NCBI RefSeq assembly: GCF_001194135.2
Contig: NC_068984.1
Span: 54,616,889-54,680,888, forward strand
DNA from: Octopus bimaculoides
Lineage: Eukaryota
DNA length: 64,000 nt
Direction: 5' to 3'
This document shows, one piece after another, positions 2,274 through 22,563 of the stretch. The notes beneath the pieces were generated by a model that made no database searches, was not told the DNA's origin, and saw only the letters and a list, made by a program, of their open reading frames with translations. A program made the translations under genes and the position numbers. Every line of letters begins with the position of its first letter. The stretch's first letter is position 1.

Positions 2274-2479
2274 TGGTTTCAAATTTTGGCATCAATTTCG
2301 GGGAGGGGTTAGTTGATCAAATCGACCCAATGCTCAATTAGTGCGTCTTTTATCAACCACACCGAAAGGGAGAAAGGCAAAGTCGACTTCAGCGGAATTT
2401 GAACTCAGAACGTAAAGACGGACGAAGCGCCGCCTAGCATTTTGCCCGGCTTGCTAACGATTCGGCTAGTTCACTGCCG
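2274..2479 (-). mobile_element. tRNA-derived SINE, family A (head GGCGGCGAGCTGGCAGAATCGTTAGC)
   Basis: Reverse complement matches the many other copies here: A box, B box GAGTTCAAATTCC, central GTCGACTTTGCCTTTC...GAT(A)AAA, tail CCAAAATTTGAAACCA. Confidence 0.9.
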
Positions 2480-2651
2480 GAATCAAATATACACGGTTTC
2501 TGAGTACGATGGGGCTCGAATGTTTCCCTTACTGTCATATTCATCCACAGAAATAGCGCTACTAAATTTATAATATCGACTTAATCTCCTTAATTTTTAT
2601 ATTTCGATTTCATTTTTGGCTTCTATCTATAACTATAAAAGAGAGTTTGTG

Positions 2652-2687
<36 letters not shown>

Positions 2688-3060
2688 TGTGCGTGCGTGT
2701 GTATGCGTGTGTGTGTGTGCGTGCGTGCGTGCGCGCGTGCGTGCGTGTGCTCGTATGTTCCTTATGCATTTCAAACCTGAGTTGCCGATTTTCATGTAAG
2801 GGGTATCAAAAGATTCAGTAAGGTTTTGGTTACCAACTAAACTATATTTTCATTCACATATTTGCATTACAAAAATTTAACATTATCATTTTTCTTTTAG
2901 TCACCTATTGACATTTTATATCACCACCATAATGACGATGACGTCACATTTTCTATATGCGTATGTTCGCACGCTCGTTACCTACGTTGGGCCGATGACT
3001 GACAAGTATGTGTGTGACGGTGTATGTATCTGTCAGTATACATACATTTTTGTGACGACT

Positions 3061-3099
<39 letters not shown>

Positions 3100-3857
3100 C
3101 TAAAGACAGAGACAGATACAAACAGGGACAAAGATAGGCTTCACATGTGCATTAATGCACGTGTGTGTGTCTCTTAGTTTATGTATGCAACTTCCCCTCT
3201 CCCCAACAGTGAAACACGTGGATATTGAAAGTTCACTTGCAGCTTGGACATCAAACAAACAACAACGTTCACTTTCAAGAACTACCAACATGAACATTTG
3301 CTTCATTTAACACCACTCACAATACTCTCAAATATATCTGTTTCAAGATAATTTTTCTTTAACACTCCTTGTGTTCTTCATCACTGTGAGTGTCAACGTC
3401 GCACAACCTTTTTACTGCGTTACTCAGTATTTTTTTACAGGCTATAATGTTACACAGTTCAAAAACAGCATCTTCCTTTTTATTCACTTTGTTCAGCGTT
3501 CGTTTCAAAATTATAAAATAAATTATTTTTGTATGTAAGATTGAATTTTCTTGGACTTTCACTTACTTCACCGTGACATTCATTCAATCGTGAATTTTAA
3601 AACTTTTAGTACATGTTCCAAATAAATGTTGACTTTCTGTACTTTCTTACATTAGTGACGCATATTAACTTATGATAAATTGCTATTTTTTTTATAGCCT
3701 AACTATGCTACAAAAGTATGTTTTGCACCTATATTGACTACATTTCGTTTCGCTTGAACTGCGTGTGTGTACCTTTTGCTATTTTCAATATCGATTCTAT
3801 GAGTGTGCGTTTCTGCGTTCGTTACGTCTATAGAACATTTTACGCTGTTTTAATGAG

Positions 3858-4195
3858 CCTACATCTAATGAAGTAGCAATCCTTTATGGTTGGTGATCTC
3901 CATGAAAATCATGATATTCTCATTCGTGTTCAAGATAACAACCTTAAACATGTTTCACAGATTCATCCCTCTTATGATGCTCTCTAGTATAATCTTATTC
4001 TGTAGAATGGACAAGATGGGTATTATTTTAATATTCCTCGGATTGAGCTTGCAACAGGATAGCCAATTACAAACAAAAGGGCCTCTCTCTCTCTCTCCAC
4101 ACACACAAAATATGAAACACATTTCGGCGCCAAAAATTGCAATGGGAAAATCTATTTGGGATTATATATATATTATATCCGGTGATTTTAAGAAG
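3858..4195 (+). mobile_element. Helitron RepHel fragment (pseudogenised)
   Basis: With one frameshift reads PTSNEVAI.MVGDLHENHDILIRVQDNNLKHVSQIHPSYDAL*YNLIL*NGQDGYYLNIP. This matches the Helitron pre-Rep motif PT.NEVA...HRSYDALQYPL.F..GEDGY. Confidence 0.72.
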
Positions 4196-9407: not shown

Positions 9408-9821
9408 AAATGATGCCTAAATTAGAATGAGGTAAAATAGGATTTGAAGCAATACAAGGTTTACAAATGTTCCAACTATTAAAAACAACGTGGTTCTAGT
9501 TTTGCAGTATAATAACAGATAATTTTAGGTATACTGACTGTTTTGATAAAAATGAACTGCAGAAAAATATTTTTGTGTTTGCTGAATCTATTATATGTGG
9601 GCAATATATTTTAAATTGAATGATATATAGAGCAGTGCTGGATCATGTAGAAGTCTATCTTGCGGGAAAATGTGGATGAAGGCTGGGTAAATATAGCAGG
9701 ATAGGAGTGCTATGGACTTGGTAATTTATTCTCTTAAGGGTATTTATTGATTTGTTCACACGCGCGCGCACGCGCGTTCACACGCACGCATGCGCACGCA
9801 CGTGCACATACATATATACTA

Positions 9822-9928
9822 GTTCCAAAGTTTTGTACAAGGCCAGCAATATCATGTAAAGAATGTAAAGACAGACGAAATGCCTTAAGCATTTTGCCCG
9901 GCGTGCTAACGATTTTGTCAGTTCGCCG
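9822..9928 (-). mobile_element. SINE family A, internally deleted
   Basis: Tail (GTTCCAAAGTTTTGTACAAGGCC) joined directly to the head; central domain absent. Confidence 0.8.
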
Positions 9929-9959
9929 CAAAATACATACATATATTACATTACTTTAC

Positions 9960-10445
9960 ATACATAAAGAATACTGGTGGAACTTGAAAATCAAAGCAGC
10001 TATCAAGTTAAAATAAAACCGGCCAGATATCGTTGTGTGGGACCACATAGAAAGGGTATGTTCTGTTGTGGAAATCAGCTGTCCCCTGGATAAGAAAATG
10101 GTTAGAAAAATGTAGGAGAAAGAAGACATCTATGTGCTATTGATAAGGTGTTTGCAAATCTAGTACCCAAGATACACCTTCAGCTTCATACCCATATTAT
10201 TGGAGCAACAAGATACACACCAACCCGTCTGAAGCAAAGTGTGGCTGAACTTGGAATCTTGGGGAGAGAATGCAAGTCCTTAATTCATATGGTACACATA
10301 ATCACAATATCTGGGACTATAAAAATCTGCAAGATCTTTCTAAAATTAAAAGGATGACAGTTAAAACAAGATACTTTCCTTCATAATCTTGTTAGCAAGT
10401 AGGTAGCCGGTCAAAATTTACTCTAAATTAGAAAGCGAAAGAGAA
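9960..10445 (+). mobile_element. 3' fragment of a restriction-like-endonuclease (RLE) LINE (R2/NeSL/R4 group)
   Basis: Reads KEYWWNLKIKAAIKLK*NRPDIVVWDHIERVCSVVEISCPLD...EKEDIY...PII-GA...GTIKICKIFLK, the PD-(D/E)xK RLE signature. Stops and a frameshift present. Confidence 0.85.
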
Positions 10446-11094
10446 CATACATTCATACCTACACACCTACAGACATATTAAGGACAACTTGAGCAGATGA
10501 ATTTTAGAGAAGCATGTATCTTGATTTTGGATTTACTAATATACACAATCTCGGACTTACTAATATATGAAAAATATAAATAACATAAATATTATCAGAT
10601 AGTATTATACTTCATAAATAAGTAAACACACACACACAATACATAAAACGCAAACACATATATGCACGTATGAATGTTGTTTATATTAAAATTATTCAAT
10701 ATTTGATAAAGTTGTCTTGTGACTTCCGTGCATATAAACAAACAACTTAGATTTATAAAGATATGACTATACAATATACATAACTTTAAACGTTATTATC
10801 TTTTGCAGAGTTGTGTCAGATCAATACTATGGTATGTTTGTAAATTACATTTTAGCAACGACAGGTTAATATATGCTAAAACACTTGTATTAGCTAATAA
10901 ATATCTGTTTTTAGGAAATGTAATGCAGTCAAGTTAAACGTAAAGTTAAGAAAGGAAGAAGTAGATTAAAATAACGTTAACAGAAAAATATGCAAATTTG
11001 TATAGTTTGAAATAAGTGTTCATTTTTGTAAATGAAAGTCTGAAAAGGAAGTTGTAAGCTGTATGTTCAATAATTAATATTGTTTATCTTTTAT

Positions 11095-11325
11095 TTGTTT
11101 CAATCAATGGACTGCAGCCATGCTGGGGCCCCGCAATGAAAGGTCTTGGTAGAAACAAGTAGCTATTCATCTTTAGGTCTTGTACTTATTCCATGACTCT
11201 CTTTTGCCGAGCCGATAGATTACGGGGACGTAAGCAAACCAGCACCAGTTGCTAGGCTGTGTAGGGGATCAGACTGGACTGACACAAATATACATACACA
11301 TCTATATATGATGGATTCCCACACA
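11095..11325 (-). mobile_element. SINE family B, 3' half
   Basis: GGACTGCAGCCATGCTGGGG...TTACGGGGACGTAAGCAAACCAGCACC matches the family-B tail. Confidence 0.75.
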
Positions 11326-11559
11326 GCGGACTCATATTTCTAGCATCAGAAGTTGGATTTCTCCCTTTAAGAGGCATTTCCGTAGCGAAGTACTTGAATG
11401 TACATCCACCTCCTCCTTTCTACAGATAATTTTGCAGATTGAAGTGATTATTTGCTCACTGAAGTATGACAGCACTAGGAAACAGGTATTAGGAAAGTTT
11501 ATCCTTTTTTGTGTGTTTGGGAACATTAGTAATGATGGGCAGCCGTTAACCTGCATCAT

Positions 11560-11870
11560 TCTATTAAATGTGAATCGGCTTTTACTTCTTCAAGCAGCAA
11601 ATTTATCACCTTCTACTAACAATGAAAACGCAGAAATCTGAACGAAAACACAAGATTAAACCCATTAGACTCAATTTTACTAGCTGTGAAGAACTATACA
11701 CAAAATTTCTTATTCTTTAAGCCTTTCTTGAAACCTTTCTTATAGCTGTCAATAGACTTAATGGCGCCATGCAAGGACATGAGCAACTCAATCCCAAAAC
11801 ACTAAAACACTATAGATATGTTTTTAGCTATGACATAGTATCCCTCTACATCTCGATCTCTGCTCCCCCG
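11560..11870 (+). mobile_element. Penelope-like RT fragment
   Basis: KHKIKPIRL...YVFSYDIVSLYISI resembles the Penelope RT RPI and F.SFDV.SLYT.I motifs; heavily decayed. Confidence 0.5.
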
Positions 11871-11879
11871 TTTTATTTG

Positions 11880-12950
11880 TGCTTACTTATACTTGCAGCG
11901 GCTATCAACCGGGCGGTGGTTGTGGTGGTGATGGTAGTGGACTTAGCCGGCTCTGACCAACGAGTAGAGTTCATGATCGGAATTTCGGTGGGAATATAAG
12001 TTCACATATGGTCTCTGGTCACATGCATACACACTTTGAGGTAATGAGATCCGTAGCAGCTTATCTTGCCGTCGATTGTCGACCGTCGCAGAGGATTCGC
12101 TAAGTCGCCGCCGATTATCGGAGTAGGCATAGCCTGGATTTGAAGCGGGTTATTGAGATATGCTTTAACAAAAGCTCAGGAGTTCCTCACTCCCTGTAGT
12201 TTTCCAGCATGCCAGATACCAACCCAGAATTTCTGAGGCCCTGTACTATTGCTAGATAGTCGTTAAACCTATACTAGAGGCTGGGTTCATCCATCCTTTT
12301 ACAGGCCTTATTTTGAGTCTTGCCGGGATTCTTGCAACCCTCTTCATCAGACAATCCTAGTTGGAGTGCCCGTTTACTTACCGACGACCGGACCATACAA
12401 TAGGTTATATTGGATTCAATGCTACCAGAAGCACTCATGAAAGACCTCATAAGACACCTAATACAGGCCCTCCTATCTATCAAACTACTTGCTGTCTGTT
12501 TCTTTCTTGCAATCTCTATCGCCTTTACCTAATTCACTTACATATCCGTTAATTCCACTCCATCATCGTATACAACGCATACCTCAACATCTTCAGCCTC
12601 TCGTCCAAATAGGTCTGAGATCTACCCATATGATCCAGGCTGTGAGATTACTGGTTAGCACATAAACGGACCAGTGGAAAGCAGAACATTTAATACCTGC
12701 CACTCTTGTGCCTTCTCCAACAAATATGCATATGACATCCCTATCTGATCATATGCAAAACATTTGTTAATATTCATAACCATTGCGGTTTCAGTGCAGA
12801 ACAATCCTGCGACACTGGGTCACACTCCATACTAGCTATCTAACTCAAAGTGTCAAGGTCGACTAATACGGCTCGTGATTGTCCAGAGTAATGACAAGTG
12901 CAACGAGATAGTGGATAGGGTTACCGATACCATGCAAATCCAAAAGGTCC
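11880..12950 (-). mobile_element. Highly decayed LINE-like fragment, clade uncertain
   Basis: GC-richer than its surroundings; the minus frame has SIESNITYCMV (like IES.LTY...W of L2/Rex1-type RT C-termini) and ends in a CACCAC-type tail. Confidence 0.3.
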
Positions 12951-13079
12951 TGGAAGTTAACAGCCAAATATTATAACTTAGTAGTTACTGGAAAGTTCCA
13001 ATCCCAAAGAACTGAGTAACTTTTCAGATATCTATTTCTTGATCTCACAATTTTTCTTGAGGATAAGTAATGTAAGAAA

Positions 13080-13420
13080 TATAGGATATGAAGTTGCCAG
13101 AAGTGGTTAGTGTTTAAAGTAAAATGGGATTTGCTGTCCATTATGATGTATCAGATATACTGGACCTCGATACAGAGTACAGGAGATGAAACATTTTAGT
13201 TGATCTCTGGTGAGAGAAGTGGCAGTGTAGTGGCAGAGATGGGCTAAGTGATCAATATATTCTACAAAAACTTTACGTGGTGAAAGCATATTTTAGTGTG
13301 GCTATTGTATATTTAGACAGAAATACTTTTACGAAAACTTACAAGACCGAACTCATTTTGTTTTAGTAACGAGGATAAAAGATGAATATTTTTAGCGTAA
13401 CGTGGATAAAAGGTAAAAGA
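13080..13420 (+). mobile_element. Possible Penelope GIY-YIG endonuclease remnant
   Basis: Near 13145-13195 reads roughly IRYTGPRYRVQEMKH, similar to YIG.T.R.L..R..EH; lies downstream of the Penelope RT fragment. Confidence 0.35.
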
Positions 13421-13751
13421 TAAAGATCCAGGGAGGTACAGAGATATTGCCCCAACAAAAAGCCTTGGGAAGTTAAACAAAATTGGCAAGAAGATAGTAC
13501 TAGCAGCCAATTCGTTTATGATATTAGAGAGAATTATATTCAACTGAAATGCCTTGTGATTTATTTGAGCAACCCAGCCGTGTTTTTAATAACAAGCTAC
13601 AATAAATAAATAAATAAGTAAATAAATAAGTAAAAAGGCGTGCCACATCGTCAACAATTGCCTACATACTTGTTCCAGAAACGACATACACAATGAAACC
13701 AAAATAAATGTTTCTTAATCAGGACCAATAATTAGAAGGTTACTCAATACC

Positions 13752-13905
13752 TCCCGCAGTGCTCAAGTGGTACTTTAATTCAACAATCTTGGAAAGATGA
13801 AAAGTCAAGTTAAACTCAGTGAGATGAGAGATCGGAAATTGTCGAAATAAACACCTCAAGAATGGCCTCTGTCATGCTAACAGTTCTGCCACATCACCAC
13901 CTTGA
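13752..13905 (-). mobile_element. Old SINE family A remnant
   Basis: GTGGTACTTT...GAAAGATGAAAAGTCAAGTT...AACAGTTCTGCC...CACCACCTT is a degenerate match to family A. Confidence 0.55.
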
Positions 13906-16591
13906 CAATATAATCAAAATAATGAAAATGAAAGATCATCTGAATTCGCAAGTTCCACAAAAAATTAATTTTTCTCAAGTAATCGAAACCAAAAGTGTGA
14001 TCATATCTTGTCACAAGTTCTAAAATTATCCTCCTTTTTAGGAATATATTTCTGCATAATTTTTTCTCAAGATTTTAGTATACTGACCATTTATTTAACT
14101 GAATATAAAATATTTCCTATACATAAAACCAAACCATATTGTTAGTTACAACAACAAAAATAAGGAAAAATAAATTTTCTAAATTAAATTAAAGGAAATG
14201 ATAAATAAATACTTTCATTGCTATATAATGCTTGGCTGATGGCACGGTATATCGAAACCCGAAATATATCTAATGGATGAGTTTACGTAACAGATATTTA
14301 ATAAACTAAGTCTAATCCAGTGTGAAAATTAAGTCTATTATTTCTGCACCTCGCAGCGATATGATGTGATCAGAAATATTTGTTTCAAACTTCGCAGTTT
14401 TGCAGAAATATGTAGTTATCGTAATAGGAGAAACAACCTTTAGCTATCCTTTGAAGTTCAGAAAGCGTATACCGATTGTGACAATATCGTCTTTGATAAA
14501 TCGACACTTTATTTCACATAAACGAACTCATAATAGTGAGAAAAAAAATTGCTACGGGATTTCAGTGTTTAAAATAAAATATTTTAGCGATAGTAAAATC
14601 TACTTGCATAGAAATACTTAACTCTGCGCTCAAGAAACTTGAGGTAACTATAAGAACGACCATAGGCAAGGAATCATTTAGAAATTCAAATCATGTAGAA
14701 AGTTTAAGCTGTTTTATTCCTTATTAAGCAAAAACTTTCGTAGACATTCTATTGGTGTTTACCAATGTTTGCGTACTGTTGTCTAAAGTTGGACAAGGTT
14801 AGTTCGTGATGGAATTTCAATTCTCTGCTAAGTTATATCAGTTCAATCATAACAGTTTCACTCTTGGTCATTAATTATAAAACAGATTACATACACATTT
14901 TTGTTACTGATTTTTTTTCTTTAGAAAGTAAATGTTTTATGCCACCACCTAAGTAAGTACCAATTGAAACATGATTACCTATTTGAACGCTAAAATATTT
15001 GTTTTAAAAATCTGTGCCGCCCACAAATTAGATTTATAATTTGTAATATCTAGACGATATTTTCTATTTATTGAAATCCGTACAAGCAAGTGTTTCTTCG
15101 AAGCAAATGTAATATGTCACTTCTGGCGATGTTTTCTTTTTTGTCCATTTATTCTGTTGAAATAAGGTACATATTTAATTTCGTCCGAAATAGTTTCGTA
15201 ATTTAATAGATCCTATATAATTGAAAATATATTGCAGTAAATCCTGAAAGATTTAATATTGATAGTCATATATATCCGTTCTATAAGGGGACTGAGTTAT
15301 GTAACGTTTTAAGCTATCTGTTTTTCACAATAGCTATTTCTAATAACTAAGAATAAAGTGCAATATTTGTTGGGCGATTGTTTCTGATAATAGTTTCTGT
15401 TGTTGCTAAATATATAAAAAAAACTCAAGGAAAATTTTTGGGAATAGAATAATGTTGCTTAAATGAACTCGTGTACATATGTATTTTTTCTATTTGCTCT
15501 GGAAAGATGAAAGGAAAAGTTGAATTCGTTAGTATTAGAACGTAGAAAGCTGCAAATAATTTATTCCGTTGCTCTATTCTTTCAAGACCTCCACTAATTT
15601 TATCTCAGATAAACCTTTCTATATGGACATATAACGTCTAGAATTTTCTTTTGCTGACCGGATTAGAGAAAATTACACTTTCTTATTTGAAATTTACGCT
15701 TTAATTTCTTTATACTTAGGGATATGTTTTGGTATTATGCCAAAAAGAAAGACTGACACAGACAAAGTTAAATTAAAAAGAAAAAAAGTGCCAAAAGACC
15801 AAACCTTTTTTATGCTTACAAATGATATAATGATCAACTTATAGAGACGATAGTTAGCTGGCTAGTCAGAAGTTCTTTTTAAATCATTTGCACTGAGAGG
15901 TTTCCTGGCAAAAATGCAAGCCCTTCATGACACACTGTCCTTGCCTGTAATTTTTTGTTTAACCCATATCGAGCTTTTTTTGAGACTAAGTGTATAATCG
16001 GATTTCATGGATTGATGAAAAAGAAATCTATGAAAAGTGAAATAACTTCATAATTAAAGGCTTTATTAGCTTGAAGTGCTGCACATAAATTACCATAAAT
16101 TACCATAAATGTAATTCATGTCTCTGGTTTAATTTAGCGAAACTAACCTTTAGAAGTGCTCAAATTATTTCTTCCGTTGTTTTCAGGTGCGAAGACAAGA
16201 ATCTCCACGTTGTTTACATTACCAAGTTTAGACGTGTCATGTATTTAAAGCACATTACATGTGGACAGATTATTTCTTTATTAGGCATAAAGCCCTAAAT
16301 ACAGATGGGGACACCACAAGGACAGACAAAACCACAGTGGGGACAAAAAACATAAAACGAATGTAAATGAGATGAAAGTTATATAAAAATGAAAAAATGA
16401 AAATGGACGCATGGGCCCCACTTCCATGCAGTACCATTTGAACCATTATATGTATTATCTACAATTGTTCTTTTTTCCCTTTAATTTCATACTTTTTTTT
16501 TGTCTTTAGTAGAACTTCATCAATGGTTCGATATGTCTTAAATTCACCACTGGTGGCAACTCTCCAAATTTCACCTCCACTCCTGGCGGGT

Positions 16592-16608
16592 CAATGCTAT
16601 CTCCACAC
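16592..16608 (+). repeat. Left target-site duplication of element D
   Basis: CAATGCTATCTCCACAC, identical to 18249-18265. Confidence 0.93.
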
Positions 16609-18248
16609 ATAGGAGAGTGCTGATTAGATTAACGAAGAAGGTGTAAGTTTATTTTGTCTGTTGGTTTGCTTTGGTGAAGGATTGTTTTTTTTGTTGTATG
16701 CTGCTTTGCAGCGGTGTAGTTGTGCTTTCCCTCTTTGAGAGTTAGTATGGATAGTAAAAGTAAAAGGAATTCTTTTTACTCAGACCTTAGCGGGTCTGAG
16801 TTGTCATCATCCGAAGAAGAATTGCTAAGGACTGTTGAGGTTATGGATAAGGAGTTGAAAAGGAGGAGGTTCGGAGATGTCGCCCGAGATGACAAATGTG
16901 TTAATTGATATCTAGAAGTACAAGAATCTGAGTCGAGACGGTTACAACGTGCAAGTTTCTCGAAACGGCAAAAATGATGAAAGGTAGAACCATAATGTAT
17001 AAGAAGTACTCAAGAAAGGAAAAATAGACCACATGATGACGGAGCAGGCGGAGAAGGGGATGAGGCCAATCTGGCAAGAAATAACATATCTTGCCAGAGG
17101 GCCGAAATTAGGTGAAATAGAAGTAAGATTCATAAACGAGAACACGGCGAAGAAGCACGCGGCAATGCCATTAAAGGACGAAGAGTTAGTATTTCTATCC
17201 ACGTACCTGGGACAAAGAGCGTCTCGAGTAAGGGTAGAAGGAATTCCTCCAGAAATAGACGTAGCCTGGATAGCGGCTGCTGTATTGGCCGAGACTGACG
17301 GCAAAATAGTGGTGCTCAAGACAACTAAAACAAAAAGTGTAAATTGGAAGGACCAAGTTTTGAACATGATAGTGCAAGGTTCAAGTGAGACTATAGAAGA
17401 GATGGTAGAAACAGTGACTGTGGATGAAATTATAATGAATGTAAGGGTGGAGGGCAAAATACCGCGCTGTTTTAAATGTGGTCAGAATGGCCACATAAGA
17501 GCGAAATGCCCTCCACCAGATAAAAGAGTGGAGGAAGTGCAAGAAGAAAGCAGTAAGGAGAAGACACAAGAGACGCCTCTGGAAGAACAGCAGGAGGAAG
17601 AATTGGTTCCAGAAAAAGAGGAAGAGTGGGAAAAGAGAAGGAAGAGGAAAAAGGCAAGTCCAATACACACAAAACTTCACGCAACAACTACCTAAGGCCC
17701 ACCCATACCCTATCTGTCCCATCCTCGCCCTGCAGACACTAAGCCTTCCCATTCCCCACGATCACAAAAACAAAAGAAAAGAGTACATTCAGACAATGCT
17801 TCAAAAATTCCCCTCCCCCCAGTGGATGTTTTGCGTGTATAATTCATGACGATGACCTGTTTGTAAAGGCTATTGAATGGGAGAACACATTGCATGTTGG
17901 TGTGGTGCTATTATTAACGACACAGCAAAAGATGTAAGTAGAGAGACACAATGTGAATTATGAAATATGGAAGGTTGATTTCGATAAGGAGAAAATACCA
18001 CAGTTTATTGAGTCTGAAGAATTGAAAGAGAGATTTGGGTTGGACATAATGGGGTATACAGAAAAGGAAGCAAGTGATGTTACTTGATGGGGCGGGTTAC
18101 ACCATTTTCATCATTACATTTTTTCCATCTTTCATGGTATCATACGTTTTTATTTATTTTATATTTTATTTTAATTGTACATTTTTTATGTCCCCAATGT
18201 AATTGTATGTCCCACTTTGTCGGCCCCCTCGTGGGTAATAAAGAATTA
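16609..18248 (+). mobile_element. Complete 1640-bp ORF1-only (Gag-like) non-LTR retroelement, copy D, with 17-bp TSD
   Basis: Flanked by CAATGCTATCTCCACAC at 16592-16608 and 18249-18265. About 140-bp 5'UTR, decayed ORF from ATG 16747 to TGA 18085-18087, about 160-bp 3'UTR ending CCCCCTCGTGGGTAATAAAGAATTA. No EN or RT motifs. Confidence 0.88.
17033..17695 (+). pseudogene. Gag/ORF1p-like protein core with CX2CX4HX4C zinc knuckle (element D)
   Basis: 220-aa open stretch: RRM-like RASRVRVEGIPPEID, knuckle CFKCGQNGHIRAKC, E-rich linker and basic KRRKRKK. Upstream part 16747-16908 and downstream part to 18087 are separated by stops and frameshifts. Confidence 0.85.
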
Positions 18249-18265
18249 CAATGCTATCTCCACAC
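18249..18265 (+). repeat. Right target-site duplication of element D
   Basis: CAATGCTATCTCCACAC, immediately after the AATAAAGAATTA 3' end. Confidence 0.93.
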
Positions 18266-18530
18266 CTGTCTTTCAACTTTCTGTAGTTTTCCTCCTCAAT
18301 CAATATTGCCTTCATATCCTCTGCATATATGTATGAAGGCACCTTCACTCTTACTATTGAATGAAACTTATTTTTTTTCTGTTTCTACATTCTTTGGGTA
18401 CGTCACATAATACCACACTCCATCTCCTCCTCGTATCTTCTTTCCTTTCTCTCGGACTTTTTGTTGTCTCTTTTCTTCCTCCATAAATAGTCTCTCCATC
18501 TCACCTTCCTACAGTTGGATTTCCGACGTT

Positions 18531-18738
18531 ACCAATGCAAAAGTAGGGGACACATGCAAGCAAAGTGTCCCCTAAGAGAGGCGAGCGAGGATGCAGCGGT
18601 GGAAGAAAATAAAAACGAAGAGACAACAGATAAAAAAAGAGCGAGGGTGGAGTCGCCACCCAAAAGTCAAAAAAAAAAAAGGAAGAAAAGACAACAGCAA
18701 GTGGAAGTACAGAGATTCGAACGCAGGAAGCGGAGCCA

Positions 18739-18773
<35 letters not shown>

Positions 18774-19134
18774 AAAAGGGCGAAAGTGGATGAGGAGAGT
18801 GGAAGAGAGGATAGCGTATGTAAGGAGGACAGAACGAACTAAGGGACGACACTTGGAAAAGTTAATTTTCTATTATATGGTCATTGAAATTGAGAAAAAA
18901 TTAACGAAAATGAAAGGGATAGTAAGAATAAAGTTGGAGCAACATATGTTTGAACAAGATGATAGAGCGTTATTGGTGGATGTAGAGAAGATAGAAAGAC
19001 TAACGGAGTTGTTTGAAAACAAGATTCCTAAAAGTAAACTATATGTTCGGAACGAAAATCTACCCAAGGTAATAGGTGTAGAGGAACTTATGGAACGTAT
19101 AACGCACGAATGTAATCGATCACTAACTGTATAA
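18531..19134 (+). mobile_element. ORF1-family retroelement copy B (5'-truncated, 3'UTR missing)
   Basis: Begins inside the knuckle (YQCKSRGHMQAKC), then a K/E-rich linker, (GA)n, and a C-terminal domain IVRIKLEQHMFEQDDRALL...LPKVIGVEELMER homologous to copy C. Confidence 0.78.
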
Positions 19135-19985
19135 AGAAAACTGTAAAATGGAACTACGAGCTTTAGGGGGCTCGTAAGCCATTTCATCCTTTCATTAAAA
19201 TATTCCATCACATATTCCTCATTCGTTACATGTACCCCACGTTTTGTGTTGTCTGTCCTTGAAATGTCCATTCTATATTGGACTTTATGCCCAAATAAAG
19301 ATAGTAGTTGGGTTTCCGACTCTTTCTCCAATGGAACAACTGGTATCTTTACTGGTAACTCCACTTTCTTTTTCCTTCCTACTACCCACCTTCACAGTTT
19401 CTTTTCTCACCCCTTCTCTCTTCTTTTTCTGTTTCTCTGGTGGAAAACTCATTTCTCCGCTCCTTTTCTTTTTAACCATAGTGAATCCCTTCGTTTCTTT
19501 TTCTGTTGCCTTGTCCTGTACTACCTGGTCCACACTCTCCTGCCTCTTCTCCTGTTCTGTTTGTGGCTTTCTTTGGGTGCACCATGCCGCCCTGTGGCCC
19601 CTTTCTCCACATGTGAAACACACTGGCGGCCTCCCCTCCATTGTAACTCTCAGTCTCGCATCTTCTGGCAGCACAATCTCATTCACCAGACTGTTCAAGT
19701 CCTCTGTTGTTGCCTGAATTGTTAATTCGATACCATATCCCCAGTGATCTACCTTCTGAGTCCTTGTAGCCTTCAGAATCTTCCCGTCTTTCATATTATA
19801 TATTATGGCTGTCATCAGACATTCTTCTTTCAATTCGGGTGGCACCTTACCCACTCGCACATTGGCCACACGTTTGCTGCAGTACGAAGGCAAGAGCACC
19901 CATTCCTCTGTCCTTATTGCCTCTGTGGAGTGTTTTATTGTAATAAGATTACTGTTACTTGGTTCCCTCCTATTCACTTACAGTA
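19135..19985 (-). mobile_element. ORF1-family retroelement copy A (5'-truncated), 230-aa Gag-like ORF 19285-19977
   Basis: AIRTEEWVLLPSYCSKRVANVRVGKVPPEL aligns with D's PLKDEELVFLSTYLGQRASRVRVEGIPPEI; knuckle CFTCGERGHRAAWC; basic KKQKKKR. Confidence 0.85.
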
Positions 19986-22563
19986 GCTACTCAGTATATT
20001 TGTAGAGAACGACTAAATCAATAAAATATCACAATAAAAATCAGCATGCTAAAATATAAATTTGATGAATCATTACATGTACTTAATGCATTCTGCGAGA
20101 ATTCATTATATTGGAATTAAATCTTTAAAATCTAATATGAGCGTCATGGAAAATGTACTATATTAGATGCATAGTAACTTAGACTATATAGTTTACAGAC
20201 TAAAGTATGTAGTCCATCTTATTACGAGAAACTCCTCAAAGATATAAATTTAAAATCTTGTCCTACTCTGATGAAGGTATGATGTGTTGACGGAGAAAAT
20301 TGACTAAAAGGTTTAAAGATATATGTATGAGAGTCATAATAAGTGAAAGAATGGCAATCCTTAATACAAGATCTAGTTTCTGTATCATTAAGCAGATGTT
20401 AGACACTTTTGCAACTGAATACAGTATTAGAACCATACCGACTTACACCTTCAATGTCGGTGCATTTTGACAAAAGTTTAAGAAGTTCGATTCACAACTA
20501 CGAGATGTCCGGTTCGATCTCACTATGTAGCATTTTGGGTAAATACAATTTTCTGCACCTTCAGGTTGACTCATACCTTGAAATTAGATTGACGGAAACT
20601 GCATAGGGACCTACAATTCAAAAGGTACAACCTTGTTAAATACTGTGTCAGGCTGATTCTACCAATGAATTACATTGAGGATTCCCGTATCTGTATAATG
20701 TTTAATCATTTACGTGTTAATTTAGGAGCATGTAATTCAGTTGATTGAACAATTTAATCTTTGTCGAACGACAGAGATCCTTCACCTCCACAGCTTCAAC
20801 GGAAAGGACCACTGAAAGGTAAATGTCTTGGCAATGGAGAAAAAGCAGGAAATGAACTGCTGACCTTTAAACTGGCTGTCTCTCTCAAGTAAATTAAATG
20901 TTAAATGCTGGGCTATAAACAAGAAAAAAAAATTAAATTCTCTGCAAGTGTAAAGGCATTTTGTTGTTATAAATTATTGCAAATGTTATTATATTAAAAT
21001 TACTGTATATTCTGTTACTCTGTTCCTACTTGTATATAAATCCATTTTTTTCTGTTAACAAATTATACAAGTCAATTCTTCATAGATTAAGCAATTGGAA
21101 TATTGTTTGGGTTTGCTCACGATAAAATAAAAATAGTTTTGGTAATAATAATTTTTATACTTTTTTTGTAATAATTTACAAAATTTATTAATTTACTTTA
21201 GTAGCTGTATATTTTTACATGTGATATATTTGTCACGTTTTGAAAAGATAACAATACATAATAATAAATGTAGCACTTATAAAATCTAATGTCAATTTTA
21301 CATTGTTTGATATTTGCCGTAAAGATGAAACTGGTTTCACAAGAGATTCTTAAATGTTTCCAATTATCTTTTTATTGCATATTGTTTATTATTAATAATT
21401 TCAAAATTATCCTGGAGACTGAAGCAAAGGCAACAATATCTGTTATGTATTTCACCTGTTATACAAAATTTAATAAACTGGATTCATTTGTAAATAGAAA
21501 ACTGATGTTGGTATAATTATCACAAAAACAGATTGGCCAAAAGCAGCTGGGTGAGTACAAATATAAAATTAATATTTCATTTAATAACTGCTATAACCAT
21601 TGAATGAGCTTTAGGTAGGATGGCAGCGGTTAACCAAATGCAATTAATCTTCACATATGATTAAATTTATGCTTCTTTCATGACACTCTGCTAGATGGAA
21701 ATATTCACCCCTAACAAAAGTTCAAATATTGGATTAGTATTGAAATACTAAAATATTTCATGCATGAAGATGGTATCTTACGTAATTGTTCAACCAGGAA
21801 GAAATAGAGGTAAAATTTCAACTCCAACCCTCCCTATCTGTCTTAGAAAAAAAACACGTTTGAGAATGACCAGATGGAATAACTTTTAACATAAATATGC
21901 TCGATTAGAGCTGACCCAAAGTTAAGCAACAACAATAACAATGTATGTGCAAGAATAAGAATATTAGTTTATATTTTGTGTTCAACAAGTATGTAAATAA
22001 TGGTTTCTTAGGCTGACAGGAGACCTGGGAAGGGTTTAGACGATTACATCGCTCCGGCACTTGACTTTTACTTTGTTATCGACTTCAGAAGTAAGGTGTG
22101 TAAGACTGCCACATGATGGTCTCTAATATAGGCACAAAGCCTGAGATTGAAAGTGAGGAATTATTCGATACCATTGACTCCAGTTATTGATTTTAATTTA
22201 TGTGATCGAGTCCAGGAGAATGGATGTCAAAATTGACCTCAGCTTGTTTGACATGAAAAAAGTAGATATTGCAAGCTAGTTTATCTGACACTTATTTTCC
22301 CAATCCACCGTGTATCTCTCCTTCTAATATTAGTTTCTAACACAGTCAAAGGACCATGTATTTTTAGAAGGATGTAGTAGTGGATAAAAATCTAGATCAG
22401 TATTTGACTGCTATTGTATTGTATCGATCCCTGAAGTGACGAAAGACAAAGTTGACCCTAGCTGAAATTAGATTTGGAAGTAAAGGCCGTAACTAAATAC
22501 CATAAGGCATCTCCGATGTACTAATGATGCTACCAACCCACCACTCCTTTCCAGTATTAAAAC

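What the first reader, a model, noticed from the sequence alone, without database searches (positions are those of the whole stretch)
16592..18265. A 1.64-kb Gag/ORF1-only retroelement that inserted as a unit (perfect 17-bp TSD): candidate 'half-LINE' family
Seen: a perfect 17-bp direct repeat brackets a 1640-bp unit with a short 5'UTR and one decayed ORF of about 445 codons (RRM-like segment, one CX2CX4HX4C knuckle, E/K-rich linker, C-terminal domain). A T-rich 3'UTR ends AATAAAGAATTA. There is no room for, or trace of, an APE endonuclease or RT. Known: 7-20-bp TSDs are the footprint of target-primed reverse transcription; CCHC-knuckle ORF1 proteins occur in L1/Tx1- and I/Jockey-type LINEs; ORF1-only non-autonomous elements exist (mammalian HAL1). 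Inference: the TSD abuts both ends, so this RT-less RNA was itself retrotransposed in trans by a partner LINE rather than being a post-insertion deletion product. Whether such a family is described in cephalopods is unknown to me.
Basis: partly seen in the sequence, partly recalled or inferred. Interest (0 to 1): 0.88.

Follow-up and report, generated by a model that had tools for sequence, protein, structure and literature searches.

The report
ORF1-only "half-LINE" in octopus DNA
A 1.64-kb dead retrotransposon copy in an octopod genome keeps only the RNA-binding gene of a LINE and has lost the copying enzyme, so it was copied in by a full-length relative, much like mammalian HAL1 elements.

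Summary
A perfect 17-bp target-site duplication (16592-16608 / 18249-18265) brackets a 1640-bp unit. The unit has a 138-nt 5'UTR, one decayed ORF of about 447 codons (at least 7 lesions) and a 161-nt 3'UTR ending AATAAAGAATTA. No endonuclease or RT sequence is present.

The ORF is homologous to ORF1 of an autonomous octopod LINE family. Its ORF2 carries Exo_endo_phos, RVT_1 and zf-RVT domains. Full-length copies occur in Octopus sinensis, O. vulgaris and Argonauta hians, and they share the 5' terminus (ATAGGA...) and the 3' tail (...CCCCTTGTGGGTAATAAAGAAAT).

The copy is not a lone deletion:
- It sits inside a second ORF1-only copy on the other strand.
- That second copy also carries a third, 5'-truncated ORF1-only copy with its own 15-bp TSD.
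- O. sinensis has two more ORF1-only copies, one with a 19-bp TSD and one with an intact 463-codon ORF.

The ORF1-only copies still keep the ORF1-stop/ORF2-start junction (GGTAAGYGATG). They were therefore derived by an almost exact excision of ORF2.

This is a cephalopod analogue of mammalian HAL1: a new member of a known kind, of moderate interest. Genome-wide copy number and selection on ORF1 remain untested.

The parts
16592..16608 (.). Left copy of the 17-bp target-site duplication of the inner element
   Evidence: Exact repeat D6. Chance expectation is about 0.08 per window.
16609..16746 (+). 5'UTR of the inner ORF1-only element, starting at the family's canonical 5' terminus ATAGGAGAGTG
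   Evidence: The same ATAGG(A) start is seen in L001, in the L009 units and in L010 unit b. L010a starts ATGGATGTGATATAATGAG, a close variant.
16747..18087 (+). Decayed ORF1 of about 447 codons with at least 4 frameshifts and 3 in-frame stops. It comprises an N-terminal region, two RRM-like folds, one CCHC knuckle, an E/K-rich then P-rich linker, and a C-terminal region.
   Evidence: Three-frame translation. Frame-aware tblastn against L008, L010a, P0066 and P0001. 70% identity to P0001. Profile search found 926 cluster representatives at E<=1e-3; every one whose source was looked up and that carries a species name is octopod.
17033..17695 (+). Longest open stretch (220 aa), covering the RRM-like folds, the knuckle and the E/K linker
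   Evidence: ORF list. AlphaFold pLDDT 84.5. Foldseek best hits are tandem RRMs at E=4.7e-3.
17468..17509 (+). CX2CX4HX4C zinc knuckle (CFKCGQNGHIRAKC)
   Evidence: Pfam zf-CCHC E=1.4e-4, 22.2 bits against a cut-off of 20.8. Coordinates.
18070..18079 (+). Relic of the ORF1-stop/ORF2-start junction (GCAAGTGATG). The former ORF2 ATG is at 18077-18079 and is followed directly by 3'UTR sequence.
   Evidence: Full-length copies read TAA-GGTAAGTN-ATG-ORF2. ORF1-only copies L010a and L008 read GGTAAGTGATG and GGTAAGCGATG, then 3'UTR.
18088..18248 (+). 3'UTR of 161 nt with the family tail. It ends in a 4-bp hairpin region (18224-18236) followed by AATAAAGAATTA. There is no poly(A).
   Evidence: nhmmer tail profile E=4.7e-12. 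3'UTR alignment with full-length copies. Hairpin pair counts.
18249..18265 (.). Right copy of the 17-bp TSD
16271..16505 (-). 3'UTR of 235 nt and tail (...GGGCTTTATGCCTAATAAAGAAATA) of the outer, host ORF1-only element. No ORF2 lies between its ORF1 stop and its tail.
   Evidence: (E=4.7e-11)
16506..16608 (-). Last 33 codons and the stop of the outer element's ORF1 (C-terminal domain), cut off by the inner insertion
   Evidence: tblastn with P0001 aa 353-386, 79% identity
18266..18512 (-). Outer ORF1 C-terminal domain, the middle piece between the two nested insertions
   Evidence: tblastn with P0001 aa 265-358, 73-78% identity
18513..18527 (.). Left TSD of the third element (AGTTGGATTTCCGAC)
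   Evidence: Its partner at 19306-19320 matches 14 of 15 bases.
18528..19305 (+). Third element: a 5'-truncated ORF1-only copy. It starts inside the knuckle and continues through the linker, the C-terminal-domain ORF at 18790-19134, a relic of ORF2 codons 1-3 (ATGGAACTAC, 19148-19157), the 3'UTR and the tail.
   Evidence: blastp of its ORF against P0032 aa 205-288 gives 39% identity, E=7e-17. blastx of its first 60 nt matches knuckles. Tail nhmmer E=4e-7. Junction.
19306..19320 (.). Right TSD of the third element (AGTTGGGTTTCCGAC)
19321..19977 (-). Outer ORF1 N-terminal part (RRM-like folds, knuckle, linker). The 5' end of the outer element is not resolved; it is either truncated or deleted.
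   Evidence: ORF 19285-19977, 230 aa. tblastn with P0001 aa 27-253. hmmsearch E=8e-63. No convincing TSD was found.

Best explanation
The unit at 16609-18248 is a dead but complete copy of a non-autonomous, ORF1-only derivative of an octopod LINE family.

Full-length members of that family are about 5.3-5.6 kb. They encode two proteins:
- ORF1: an N-terminal region, two RRM-like folds, one CCHC knuckle, a low-complexity linker and a small C-terminal domain.
- ORF2: AP-type endonuclease, reverse transcriptase and a zinc-binding region.

In the derivative, ORF2 has been removed almost exactly from just after its start codon to about 25-35 nt past its stop codon. What remains is the 5'UTR, ORF1, the ORF1-stop/ORF2-ATG junction and the whole 3'UTR.

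The proposed sequence of events is as follows. An ORF1-only source copy was transcribed from the normal 5' terminus (ATAGGA...). Its RNA ended in the family-specific tail: a short hairpin followed by AAUAAAGAAAUA, with no poly(A). ORF2 protein made by a full-length relative used that tail to start target-primed reverse transcription at a staggered nick. The insertion landed in the coding region of an older ORF1-only copy on the opposite strand and produced the 17-bp duplication. The copy then decayed.

Shown: the insertion and its limits; the absence of ORF2; homology to ORF1 of full-length LINEs; the shared termini; the retained junction; the existence of other ORF1-only copies.

Inferred: supply of ORF2p in trans; recognition of the tail hairpin; any role for the element's own ORF1 protein.
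For: Insertion:
- The TSD is perfect 17/17, and the empty site is restored in the alignment to P0001.
- No ORF2 is present: tblastn with the family's ORF2 finds nothing in the window.

Full-length relatives with homologous ORF1 followed by ORF2:
- L007, O. sinensis.
- L009, O. vulgaris, three units.
- L010, O. sinensis, units b-e.
- L011, Argonauta hians, with a perfect 16-bp TSD.
- L012.
- ORF2 matches Pfam Exo_endo_phos, RVT_1 and zf-RVT. It is collinear with human L1 ORF2p at E=4e-42.

Shared ends:
- The 3' tail is shared by full-length, ORF1-only and SINE copies. The nhmmer profile gives 17 hits down to E=3e-14.
- The 5' terminus is shared.

Other ORF1-only copies:
- The window's outer copy.
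- The window's third copy, with a 15-bp TSD.
- L008 9458-11055, with a 19-bp TSD (18/19) and collinear with the inner copy from 5'UTR to tail.
- L010a, with an intact 463-codon ORF.

Derivation by deletion: the junction relic GGTAAGYGATG is retained.

Propagation after the deletion: the inner copy, L008 and L010a share the same breakpoint although their ORF1 domains are only 37-56% identical.

Tail structure: the tail hairpin is paired in 89.7% of cells, and 3 of 4 pairs show compensatory changes.
Against: - Only five ORF1-only copies were seen, in about 230 kb of sampled octopod DNA. The loci were not sampled at random.
- No second copy of the inner element's own subfamily was found. The closest relative is a 70%-identical protein, so a consensus, the copy's age and the state of its source ORF are unknown.
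- The inner copy has at least 7 disabling lesions yet a perfect TSD. This would also fit a source that was already non-coding.
- Breakpoints differ slightly between lineages. The inner type breaks right after the ATG, the third copy after ORF2 codon 3, and the outer copy after about 70 nt. The architecture may therefore arise repeatedly rather than persist as one family.
- The ORF1 tree does not resolve ORF1-only copies as a clade.
- The hairpin was proposed from the same sequences on which it was counted.
Confidence: 0.8

Rival explanations
1. Each ORF1-only copy is an independent by-product of retrotransposing a full-length LINE RNA. During cDNA synthesis the reverse transcriptase copies the 3'UTR and then jumps to the ORF1/ORF2 junction. 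On this view there is no ORF1-only source gene and no self-propagating family.
For: Breakpoints differ between the inner type, the third copy and the outer copy. Another kind of internal deletion (ORF1 plus partial RT) exists in L013. ORF1-only copies do not form a resolved clade.
Against: The inner copy, L008 and L010a have the same breakpoint and the same P-rich linker. Yet they are only 37-56% identical in ORF1 and about 67% identical in DNA. That is hard to obtain without long propagation after one deletion event. L010a keeps an intact 463-codon ORF.
Confidence: 0.12
2. The founding ORF1-only RNA was a spliced LINE transcript, like the spliced integrated L1 copies known in humans. ORF2 would have been removed as an intron.
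For: ORF2 is removed almost exactly. A strong 5' splice-site-like motif (AG/GTAAGT) is conserved at the ORF1/ORF2 junction of full-length copies.
Against: That GTAAGT motif and the ORF2 ATG are retained in the ORF1-only copies, so this donor was not the one used. No GT...AG pair is evident at the real breakpoints. The subfamilies are too diverged to map the breakpoints to the base.
Confidence: 0.05
3. The unit is a full-length LINE insertion that lost ORF2 by a deletion after it integrated.
For: None beyond the absence of ORF2.
Against: Five copies at different loci, and in different genomes if the window is not O. sinensis (its species is unknown), have the same architecture. Three of them share the same breakpoint.
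Confidence: 0.01
4. The unit is a processed pseudogene of a domesticated, Gag-derived host gene, or a fragment of an LTR-retroelement gag gene.
For: Octopus genome annotations list relatives as ordinary proteins, for example 'CCHC-type domain-containing protein' and 'EPM2A-interacting 1-like'.
Against: There is no poly(A) tail, no LTRs and no terminal inverted repeats. The termini are identical to those of a LINE with EN-RT. There are hundreds of diverged, mostly fragmentary relatives. The TSD is 17 bp, not the 4-6 bp typical of LTR elements.
Confidence: 0.02

Closest known systems
HAL1 ('half-L1') of mammals (Smit 1999; Bao & Jurka 2010, as cited in PMC5753468)
   Same: It is a non-autonomous LINE derivative that keeps the 5' region, ORF1 and the 3' end, and lacks ORF2. 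It is mobilised in trans by the parent LINE's ORF2 protein. HAL1 is reported to have arisen several times independently, and the differing breakpoints here suggest the same.
   Different: The phylum differs (cephalopod mollusc). The ORF1 type differs: two RRM-like folds plus one CCHC knuckle, rather than the coiled-coil/RRM/CTD of mammalian L1. The element ends in a specific tail (hairpin plus AATAAAGAAATA) with no poly(A). The ORF2 start codon is retained. It is therefore an analogue of HAL1, not a member of the HAL1 family.
HeT-A of Drosophila telomeres (Gag-only non-LTR element that depends on RT from TART/TAHRE; from my own knowledge)
   Same: It encodes only a Gag-like protein with CCHC knuckle(s) and relies on RT from related elements. 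Relatives here also form head-to-tail arrays in which an ORF1-only unit directly precedes full-length units (L010).
   Different: The copy in the window is an ordinary interstitial insertion with a TSD. There is no evidence for a telomeric location or a host function. HeT-A has poly(A)-linked arrays and a very long 3'UTR.
Tail-sharing LINE/SINE pairs ('stringent' recognition, e.g. eel UnaL2/UnaSINE1; from my own knowledge)
   Same: The 3' tail is conserved among the autonomous LINE, the ORF1-only elements and a SINE subfamily. It contains a small covarying hairpin and lacks poly(A).
   Different: Recognition has not been tested. Rfam, which holds a UnaL2 3' element model, gives no match. The rider here is protein-coding and 1.6 kb long, so it is not a SINE; ARAGORN finds no tRNA gene in 15500-20500.
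Type I LINE ORF1 proteins (RRM plus CCHC knuckle; Khazina & Weichenrieder classification, from my own knowledge)
   Same: A ferredoxin-like/RRM-like fold is followed by a single CX2CX4HX4C knuckle.
   Different: The model shows two tandem folds. The structural match to RRMs is weak (E about 5e-3, TM about 0.25-0.33). No Pfam RRM or L1 ORF1 family matches.

Membership tests
Non-LTR (LINE-type) retrotransposon insertion made by target-primed reverse transcription | Variable-length target-site duplication of roughly 7-20 bp that abuts both ends | tested here: met
   17/17 bp for the inner copy. 14/15 bp for the third copy. 18/19 bp in L008 and 16/16 bp in L011.
Non-LTR (LINE-type) retrotransposon insertion made by target-primed reverse transcription | No LTRs or terminal inverted repeats; relatives show 5' truncation with a constant 3' end | tested here: met
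   No terminal repeats other than the TSD. The third copy starts inside the knuckle yet has the full tail.
Non-LTR (LINE-type) retrotransposon insertion made by target-primed reverse transcription | 3' end shared with an autonomous element that encodes EN and RT | tested here: met
   Tail profile hits on full-length copies in L007, L009, L010 and L011. ORF2 domains confirmed.
ORF1-only non-autonomous LINE derivative (HAL1-like kind) | ORF1 homologous to the ORF1 of an autonomous LINE, with ORF2 absent between ORF1 and the 3'UTR | tested here: met
ORF1-only non-autonomous LINE derivative (HAL1-like kind) | Amplified as such: several copies at different loci share the same deletion breakpoint | tested here: met
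   The inner copy, L008 and L010a share GGTAAGYGATG followed by 3'UTR. Only 3 copies share this breakpoint, and genome-wide numbers were not obtained.
ORF1-only non-autonomous LINE derivative (HAL1-like kind) | Consensus or source copies have an intact ORF1 under purifying selection | tested here: inconclusive
   One intact 463-codon ORF exists (L010a). The inner copy has at least 7 lesions. dN/dS cannot be computed at 37-56% identity without closer copies.
HAL1 proper (mammalian L1-derived family) | Derived from mammalian L1, with L1-type ORF1 (coiled coil, RRM, CTD) and a poly(A) tail | tested here: not met
   The host is an octopod. No L1 ORF1 Pfam match. The tail is AATAAAGAATTA without an A-run.
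L1/Tx1 group of LINEs (for the autonomous partner) | ORF2 with an N-terminal AP endonuclease, an RT and a C-terminal Cys-rich zinc-binding region | tested here: met
   Exo_endo_phos, RVT_1 and zf-RVT in L007, L009 and L011. End-to-end match to human L1 ORF2p at E=4e-42.
L1/Tx1 group of LINEs (for the autonomous partner) | Placement inside the clade in an RT phylogeny with reference LINE clades | not tested
   No reference set of LINE clades was available. The lack of poly(A) and the specific tail are atypical for L1.
SINE | Short, non-coding, with a pol III (tRNA/7SL/5S) head | tested here: not met
   The unit is 1640 bp with a 447-codon ORF. ARAGORN finds no tRNA gene in 15500-20500.
HeT-A-like telomeric Gag-only element | Head-to-tail arrays at chromosome ends, without TSDs | tested here: not met
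   The inner copy is a nested interstitial insertion with a TSD. Arrays exist in L009 and L010, but their chromosomal position is internal (record coordinates).

The most novel reading that the evidence does not exclude
ORF1-only elements may be an old, diversified and self-sustaining lineage across Octopoda that is kept coding by selection for its own ORF1 protein. Together with the full-length LINE and a tail-sharing SINE they would form a three-tier parasitic system, all read through one small conserved 3' hairpin. Members of the system would preferentially join head-to-tail (tail...ATAGGA junctions), giving mixed arrays reminiscent of the HeT-A/TART arrangement but at internal chromosomal sites.
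Probability: 0.3. Interest if true: 0.65.

Novelty: new member of a known kind. Interest (0 to 1): 0.45.

Why it matters
ORF1-only LINE derivatives are well known only from mammals (HAL1) and, in a special telomeric form, from Drosophila (HeT-A). A cephalopod example has a different ORF1 type and a tail-specific, poly(A)-less partner LINE.

If it proves to be an abundant family, it would show that 'keep the RNA chaperone, borrow the polymerase' is a recurrent strategy of LINE parasites. It would also allow a test of whether ORF1 protein acts in cis on its own RNA.

On the practical side, it explains hundreds of 'CCHC-type domain-containing' and 'uncharacterized' proteins in octopus annotations as LINE ORF1. 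It identifies an autonomous LINE family with near-intact copies in O. vulgaris and Argonauta. It also points to the likely partner of one octopus SINE subfamily. These points bear on the debate about which retroelements drove the expansion of octopus genomes.

Tried and rejected
- Exact-protein look-ups for P0001 and for the two window ORFs found no contigs.
- The word-indexed protein search with the whole pseudo-ORF returned only one hit. The exhaustive profile search was needed to find the family.
- I tested whether the inner type's poorly conserved C-terminal region comes from the C-terminus of ORF2 through an in-frame fusion. There is no similarity (best E about 0.7), so the idea was rejected.
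- The C-terminal-domain HMM gives only marginal scores for the inner copy and L008. Their C-terminal domains are either diverged or decayed.
- I searched for a TSD and a 5' end for the outer element. Only a non-abutting 10-mer and a 15-mer with 2 mismatches turned up, so this is unresolved. An ATAGGAG motif at 19973-19967 (minus strand) may mark a further-deleted 5' end, but that is not shown.
- The NJ tree of ORF1 has unresolved deep nodes, so it cannot decide between one and several origins.
- The splicing origin through the conserved GGTAAGT motif was rejected as the donor, because the motif is retained.
- Rfam gives no match. Pfam matches only the knuckle in ORF1.
- Literature searches found no description of ORF1-only LINE derivatives in cephalopods. 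PMC9115989 describes RTE and Dong elements only.
- The species of the window was not determined.
Full report
**Observation.** The 17-mer CAATGCTATCTCCACAC occurs exactly at 16592-16608 and 18249-18265, enclosing 1640 bp. In 100 first-order Markov simulations of the window, the mean number of 17-mers repeated within 3 kb was 0.08. A stronger test comes from the flanks. If the unit and one repeat copy are removed, the minus strand reads ...ENYRKLKDRCGDSIDPPGVEVKFGELPPVVNLRHIEPLMKFY*. This aligns without a gap to the C-terminus of an Octopus bimaculoides protein (P0001 = UniRef A0A0L8G4Z0). The insertion and its limits are therefore certain.

**Anatomy of the unit.** The unit has a 138-nt 5'UTR and an ATG at 16747. 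A reading frame follows that can be traced through at least four frameshifts and three in-frame stops to TGA at 18085-18087. After it comes a 161-nt T-rich 3'UTR ending AATAAAGAATTA. The longest open piece is 17033-17695 (220 aa). It contains the knuckle CFKCGQNGHIRAKC (Pfam zf-CCHC, E=1.4e-4) and an E/K-rich linker. No other Pfam family matches.

**Context: a triple nest.** P0001 also matches the flanks on the minus strand (19920>19363, 18526>18250, 16610>16509). The unit therefore sits inside the coding region of a second, related element, the 'outer' element. The outer ORF1 stops at 16506. It is followed by a 235-nt 3'UTR ending ...GGGCTTTATGCCTAATAAAGAAATA at 16271, again with no ORF2.

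The outer ORF1 is interrupted a second time, at 18528-19305, by a third element on the + strand. This element is flanked by AGTTGGATTTCCGAC / AGTTGGGTTTCCGAC. Its first 60 nt encode a knuckle remnant. Its 114-codon ORF (18790-19134) is 39% identical (E=7e-17) to the C-terminal part of P0032, an O. bimaculoides protein that also has the RRM-like domain. It ends in the same tail. It is thus a 5'-truncated ORF1-only copy. The window therefore holds three ORF1-only copies, which the ORF1 identities and the differing deletion breakpoints indicate belong to different subfamilies.

**The family.** A profile of the N-terminal domain found 926 cluster representatives at E<=1e-3 and 175 at E<=1e-10 among 1.84 billion. 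Every one whose source was looked up and that carries a species name is from Octopoda: O. bimaculoides, O. sinensis, O. vulgaris or Argonauta hians. Most are short fragments from assemblies of sequencing runs.

**The autonomous partner.** Fetching DNA around annotated relatives showed that this ORF1 is the first gene of a LINE.
- L007 (O. sinensis) has ORF1 at 9965-11812. A decayed ORF2 follows with Exo_endo_phos (4e-9), RVT_1 (4e-16) and zf-RVT (2e-7).
- L011 (Argonauta hians) is a 5438-bp element (9806-15243) with a perfect 16-bp TSD, an intact 527-codon ORF1 and an ORF2 broken once.
- L009 (O. vulgaris) has three units that are 99.6% identical, with a 5.28-kb period.
- L010 (O. sinensis) has four different units joined head to tail.
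- L012 shows the ORF1-to-ORF2 transition.

ORF2 aligns end to end with human L1 ORF2p (E=4e-42) and over the RT only with R2 (about 1e-19). The clade was not resolved by phylogeny.

**Shared ends.** Full-length and ORF1-only copies end in the same tail, consensus ...GTCCCCTCTTTGTTGGCCCCTTGTGGGTAATAAAGAAAT(A), without poly(A). A profile of it finds 17 sites in the window and loci. These include all three window elements (E=4.7e-12, 4.7e-11 and 4e-7) and two copies of a SINE subfamily.

Just before AATAAAG lies a 4-bp stem with a 5-nt loop. Across the 17 sequences, 89.7% of cells are paired and three of four pairs show changes on both sides (CG in 8 sequences, GC in 6 at one pair). One of 500 shuffles reaches the observed covariation score, and slid controls give 16-47% pairing. 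I proposed the stem from these same sequences, so this is supportive rather than proven. Rfam has no match.

At the 5' end, the inner copy starts ATAGGAGAGTG. Other members start ATAGGCTCTC (L001), ATAGGACGTTAC (L009), ATAGGATGTGATATAATGAC (L010b) and ATGGATGTGATATAATGAG (L010a). The inner copy is therefore a complete copy from the normal RNA start to the normal RNA end.

**Other ORF1-only copies and the breakpoint.** L008 (O. sinensis) 9458-11055 is a 1598-bp copy with a 19-bp TSD (18/19), inserted in a SINE. It is collinear with the inner copy from the 5'UTR through the N-terminus, the P-rich linker (...SHPSPADTKPTHS...) and the 3'UTR. L010a (about 2470-4184) has an intact 463-codon ORF and is joined directly to the next, full-length unit.

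In full-length copies the two genes meet as TAA-GGTAAGTN-ATG (L009, L010c, L010d; variants occur in L007, L011 and L012). The ORF1-only copies L010a, L008 and the inner copy read GGTAAGTGATG, GGTAAGCGATG and GCAAGTGATG. They then continue with sequence that aligns to the full-length 3'UTR from about 27 nt after the ORF2 stop. The third element keeps ATGGAACTAC (ORF2 codons 1-3) before its 3'UTR, and the outer element keeps the ATG plus about 70 nt.

Two conclusions follow. First, the architecture arose by near-exact removal of ORF2 from a LINE, not from an independent Gag-only ancestor. Second, the inner copy, L008 and L010a share one breakpoint although their ORF1 domains are only 37-56% identical. 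This argues for long propagation as ORF1-only elements. The different breakpoints in the other two copies suggest more than one origin.

**Protein.** With 65 homologues, AlphaFold gives pLDDT 84.5, and about 95 for residues 1-150. The model shows two beta-alpha-beta-beta-alpha-beta units before the knuckle. The best Foldseek matches in the PDB are two-RRM proteins (IMP3 RRM12 at E=4.7e-3; hnRNP A1 UP1). Other ferredoxin-like folds (ACT, NikR) score similarly. 'RRM-like' is reasonable, but it is a statement about fold only.

**Mechanism.** See Best explanation. The insertion, the lack of ORF2, the homology, the shared ends and the retained junction are shown. Inferred are trans-mobilisation by ORF2p, use of the tail hairpin as the entry site for RT (by analogy with tail-sharing LINE/SINE pairs), and any cis role of ORF1 protein.

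**Rivals.**
- Independent abortive products of full-length RNA: 0.12. This is disfavoured by the shared breakpoint among diverged copies.
- Spliced-RNA origin: 0.05. The conserved GTAAGT motif is retained, so it was not the donor.
- Post-insertion deletion: 0.01.
- Host-gene retrocopy or LTR gag fragment: 0.02.

**Comparison with known elements and novelty.** The closest known kind is mammalian HAL1, an ORF1-only L1 derivative reported to have arisen several times (PMC5753468). This element works like HAL1, but it is not a member of that family. The host phylum, the ORF1 type and the tail all differ. HeT-A is a second analogue. The papers searched on octopus LINEs describe RTE and Dong elements and do not mention this family. 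Repbase and Dfam could not be consulted. I rate it a new member of a known kind, with interest 0.45.

Noticed in passing
window 16271-19977 (minus strand), with inserts at 16609-18248 and 18528-19305: Three ORF1-only elements are nested in 3.7 kb. They appear to belong to different subfamilies. The host copy was hit twice within its own ORF1 C-terminal half.
   Followed up: yes
L010 2470-20850 (O. sinensis CM016867) and L009 4443-20000 (O. vulgaris OX597840): LINE units lie head to tail, with the tail running straight into the next ATAGGA start (for example AATAAAGAAAT|AGGATGTG). In L010 the units are from different subfamilies and the first is ORF1-only. In L009 the units are 99.6% identical. 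This suggests either end-to-end template jumping or insertion next to existing copies, and in L009 tandem duplication.
   Followed up: partly
L008 6088-6163 and L010 596-648: A subfamily of the abundant octopus tRNA-like SINE ends in the same tail (...GTTTAGCCCCTTGTGGATAGTAAAGAAATA) as this LINE family. That makes the LINE its likely partner. Most of the 20 or more SINE copies in the window have a different 3' end.
   Followed up: partly
L009 11328-11343; L010 10976-10991 and 16255-16270; L012 2062-2075: The ORF1-stop/ORF2-start junction TAA-GGTAAGTN-ATG is conserved in full-length copies. It resembles a consensus 5' splice site and places the ORF2 ATG 8 nt after the ORF1 stop, which could support termination-reinitiation. 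Its function is unknown.
   Followed up: partly
window 18224-18236, 16283-16295 (minus strand), 19280-19292, and 14 sites in loci: A 4-bp stem with a 5-nt loop lies just before AATAAAG in the tail. Compensatory changes occur across full-length, ORF1-only and SINE copies.
   Followed up: yes
P0001, P0005, P0102 (database proteins): Gene models in octopus annotations are built on these elements. P0001 joins an inner-type N-terminus to an outer-type C-terminus and skips 18 residues, so it is probably a spliced chimera. P0005 is named 'EPM2A-interacting 1-like'. P0102 fuses four LDL-receptor class A repeats to an ORF1 fragment.
   Followed up: partly
L013 1-2700 (Logan SRR11869394): This is a different internal-deletion derivative. 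ORF1 is followed within about 700 nt by the middle of RT, and the endonuclease is missing.
   Followed up: no
window 19961-19973 (minus strand): ATAGGAGGGAACC resembles the family's 5' terminus and lies directly before the point where the outer ORF1 homology begins. It may mark a copy that also lost the 5'UTR and the N-terminal region, or it may be chance.
   Followed up: partly
L001-L006 (Logan SRR11869384-94): The same contig of about 1.7 kb (a 294-codon ORF1 ending just after the knuckle, then a C/A-rich stretch) was assembled in six runs. It starts at ATAGGCTCTC after a microsatellite. Its 3' end and architecture were not resolved.
   Followed up: no
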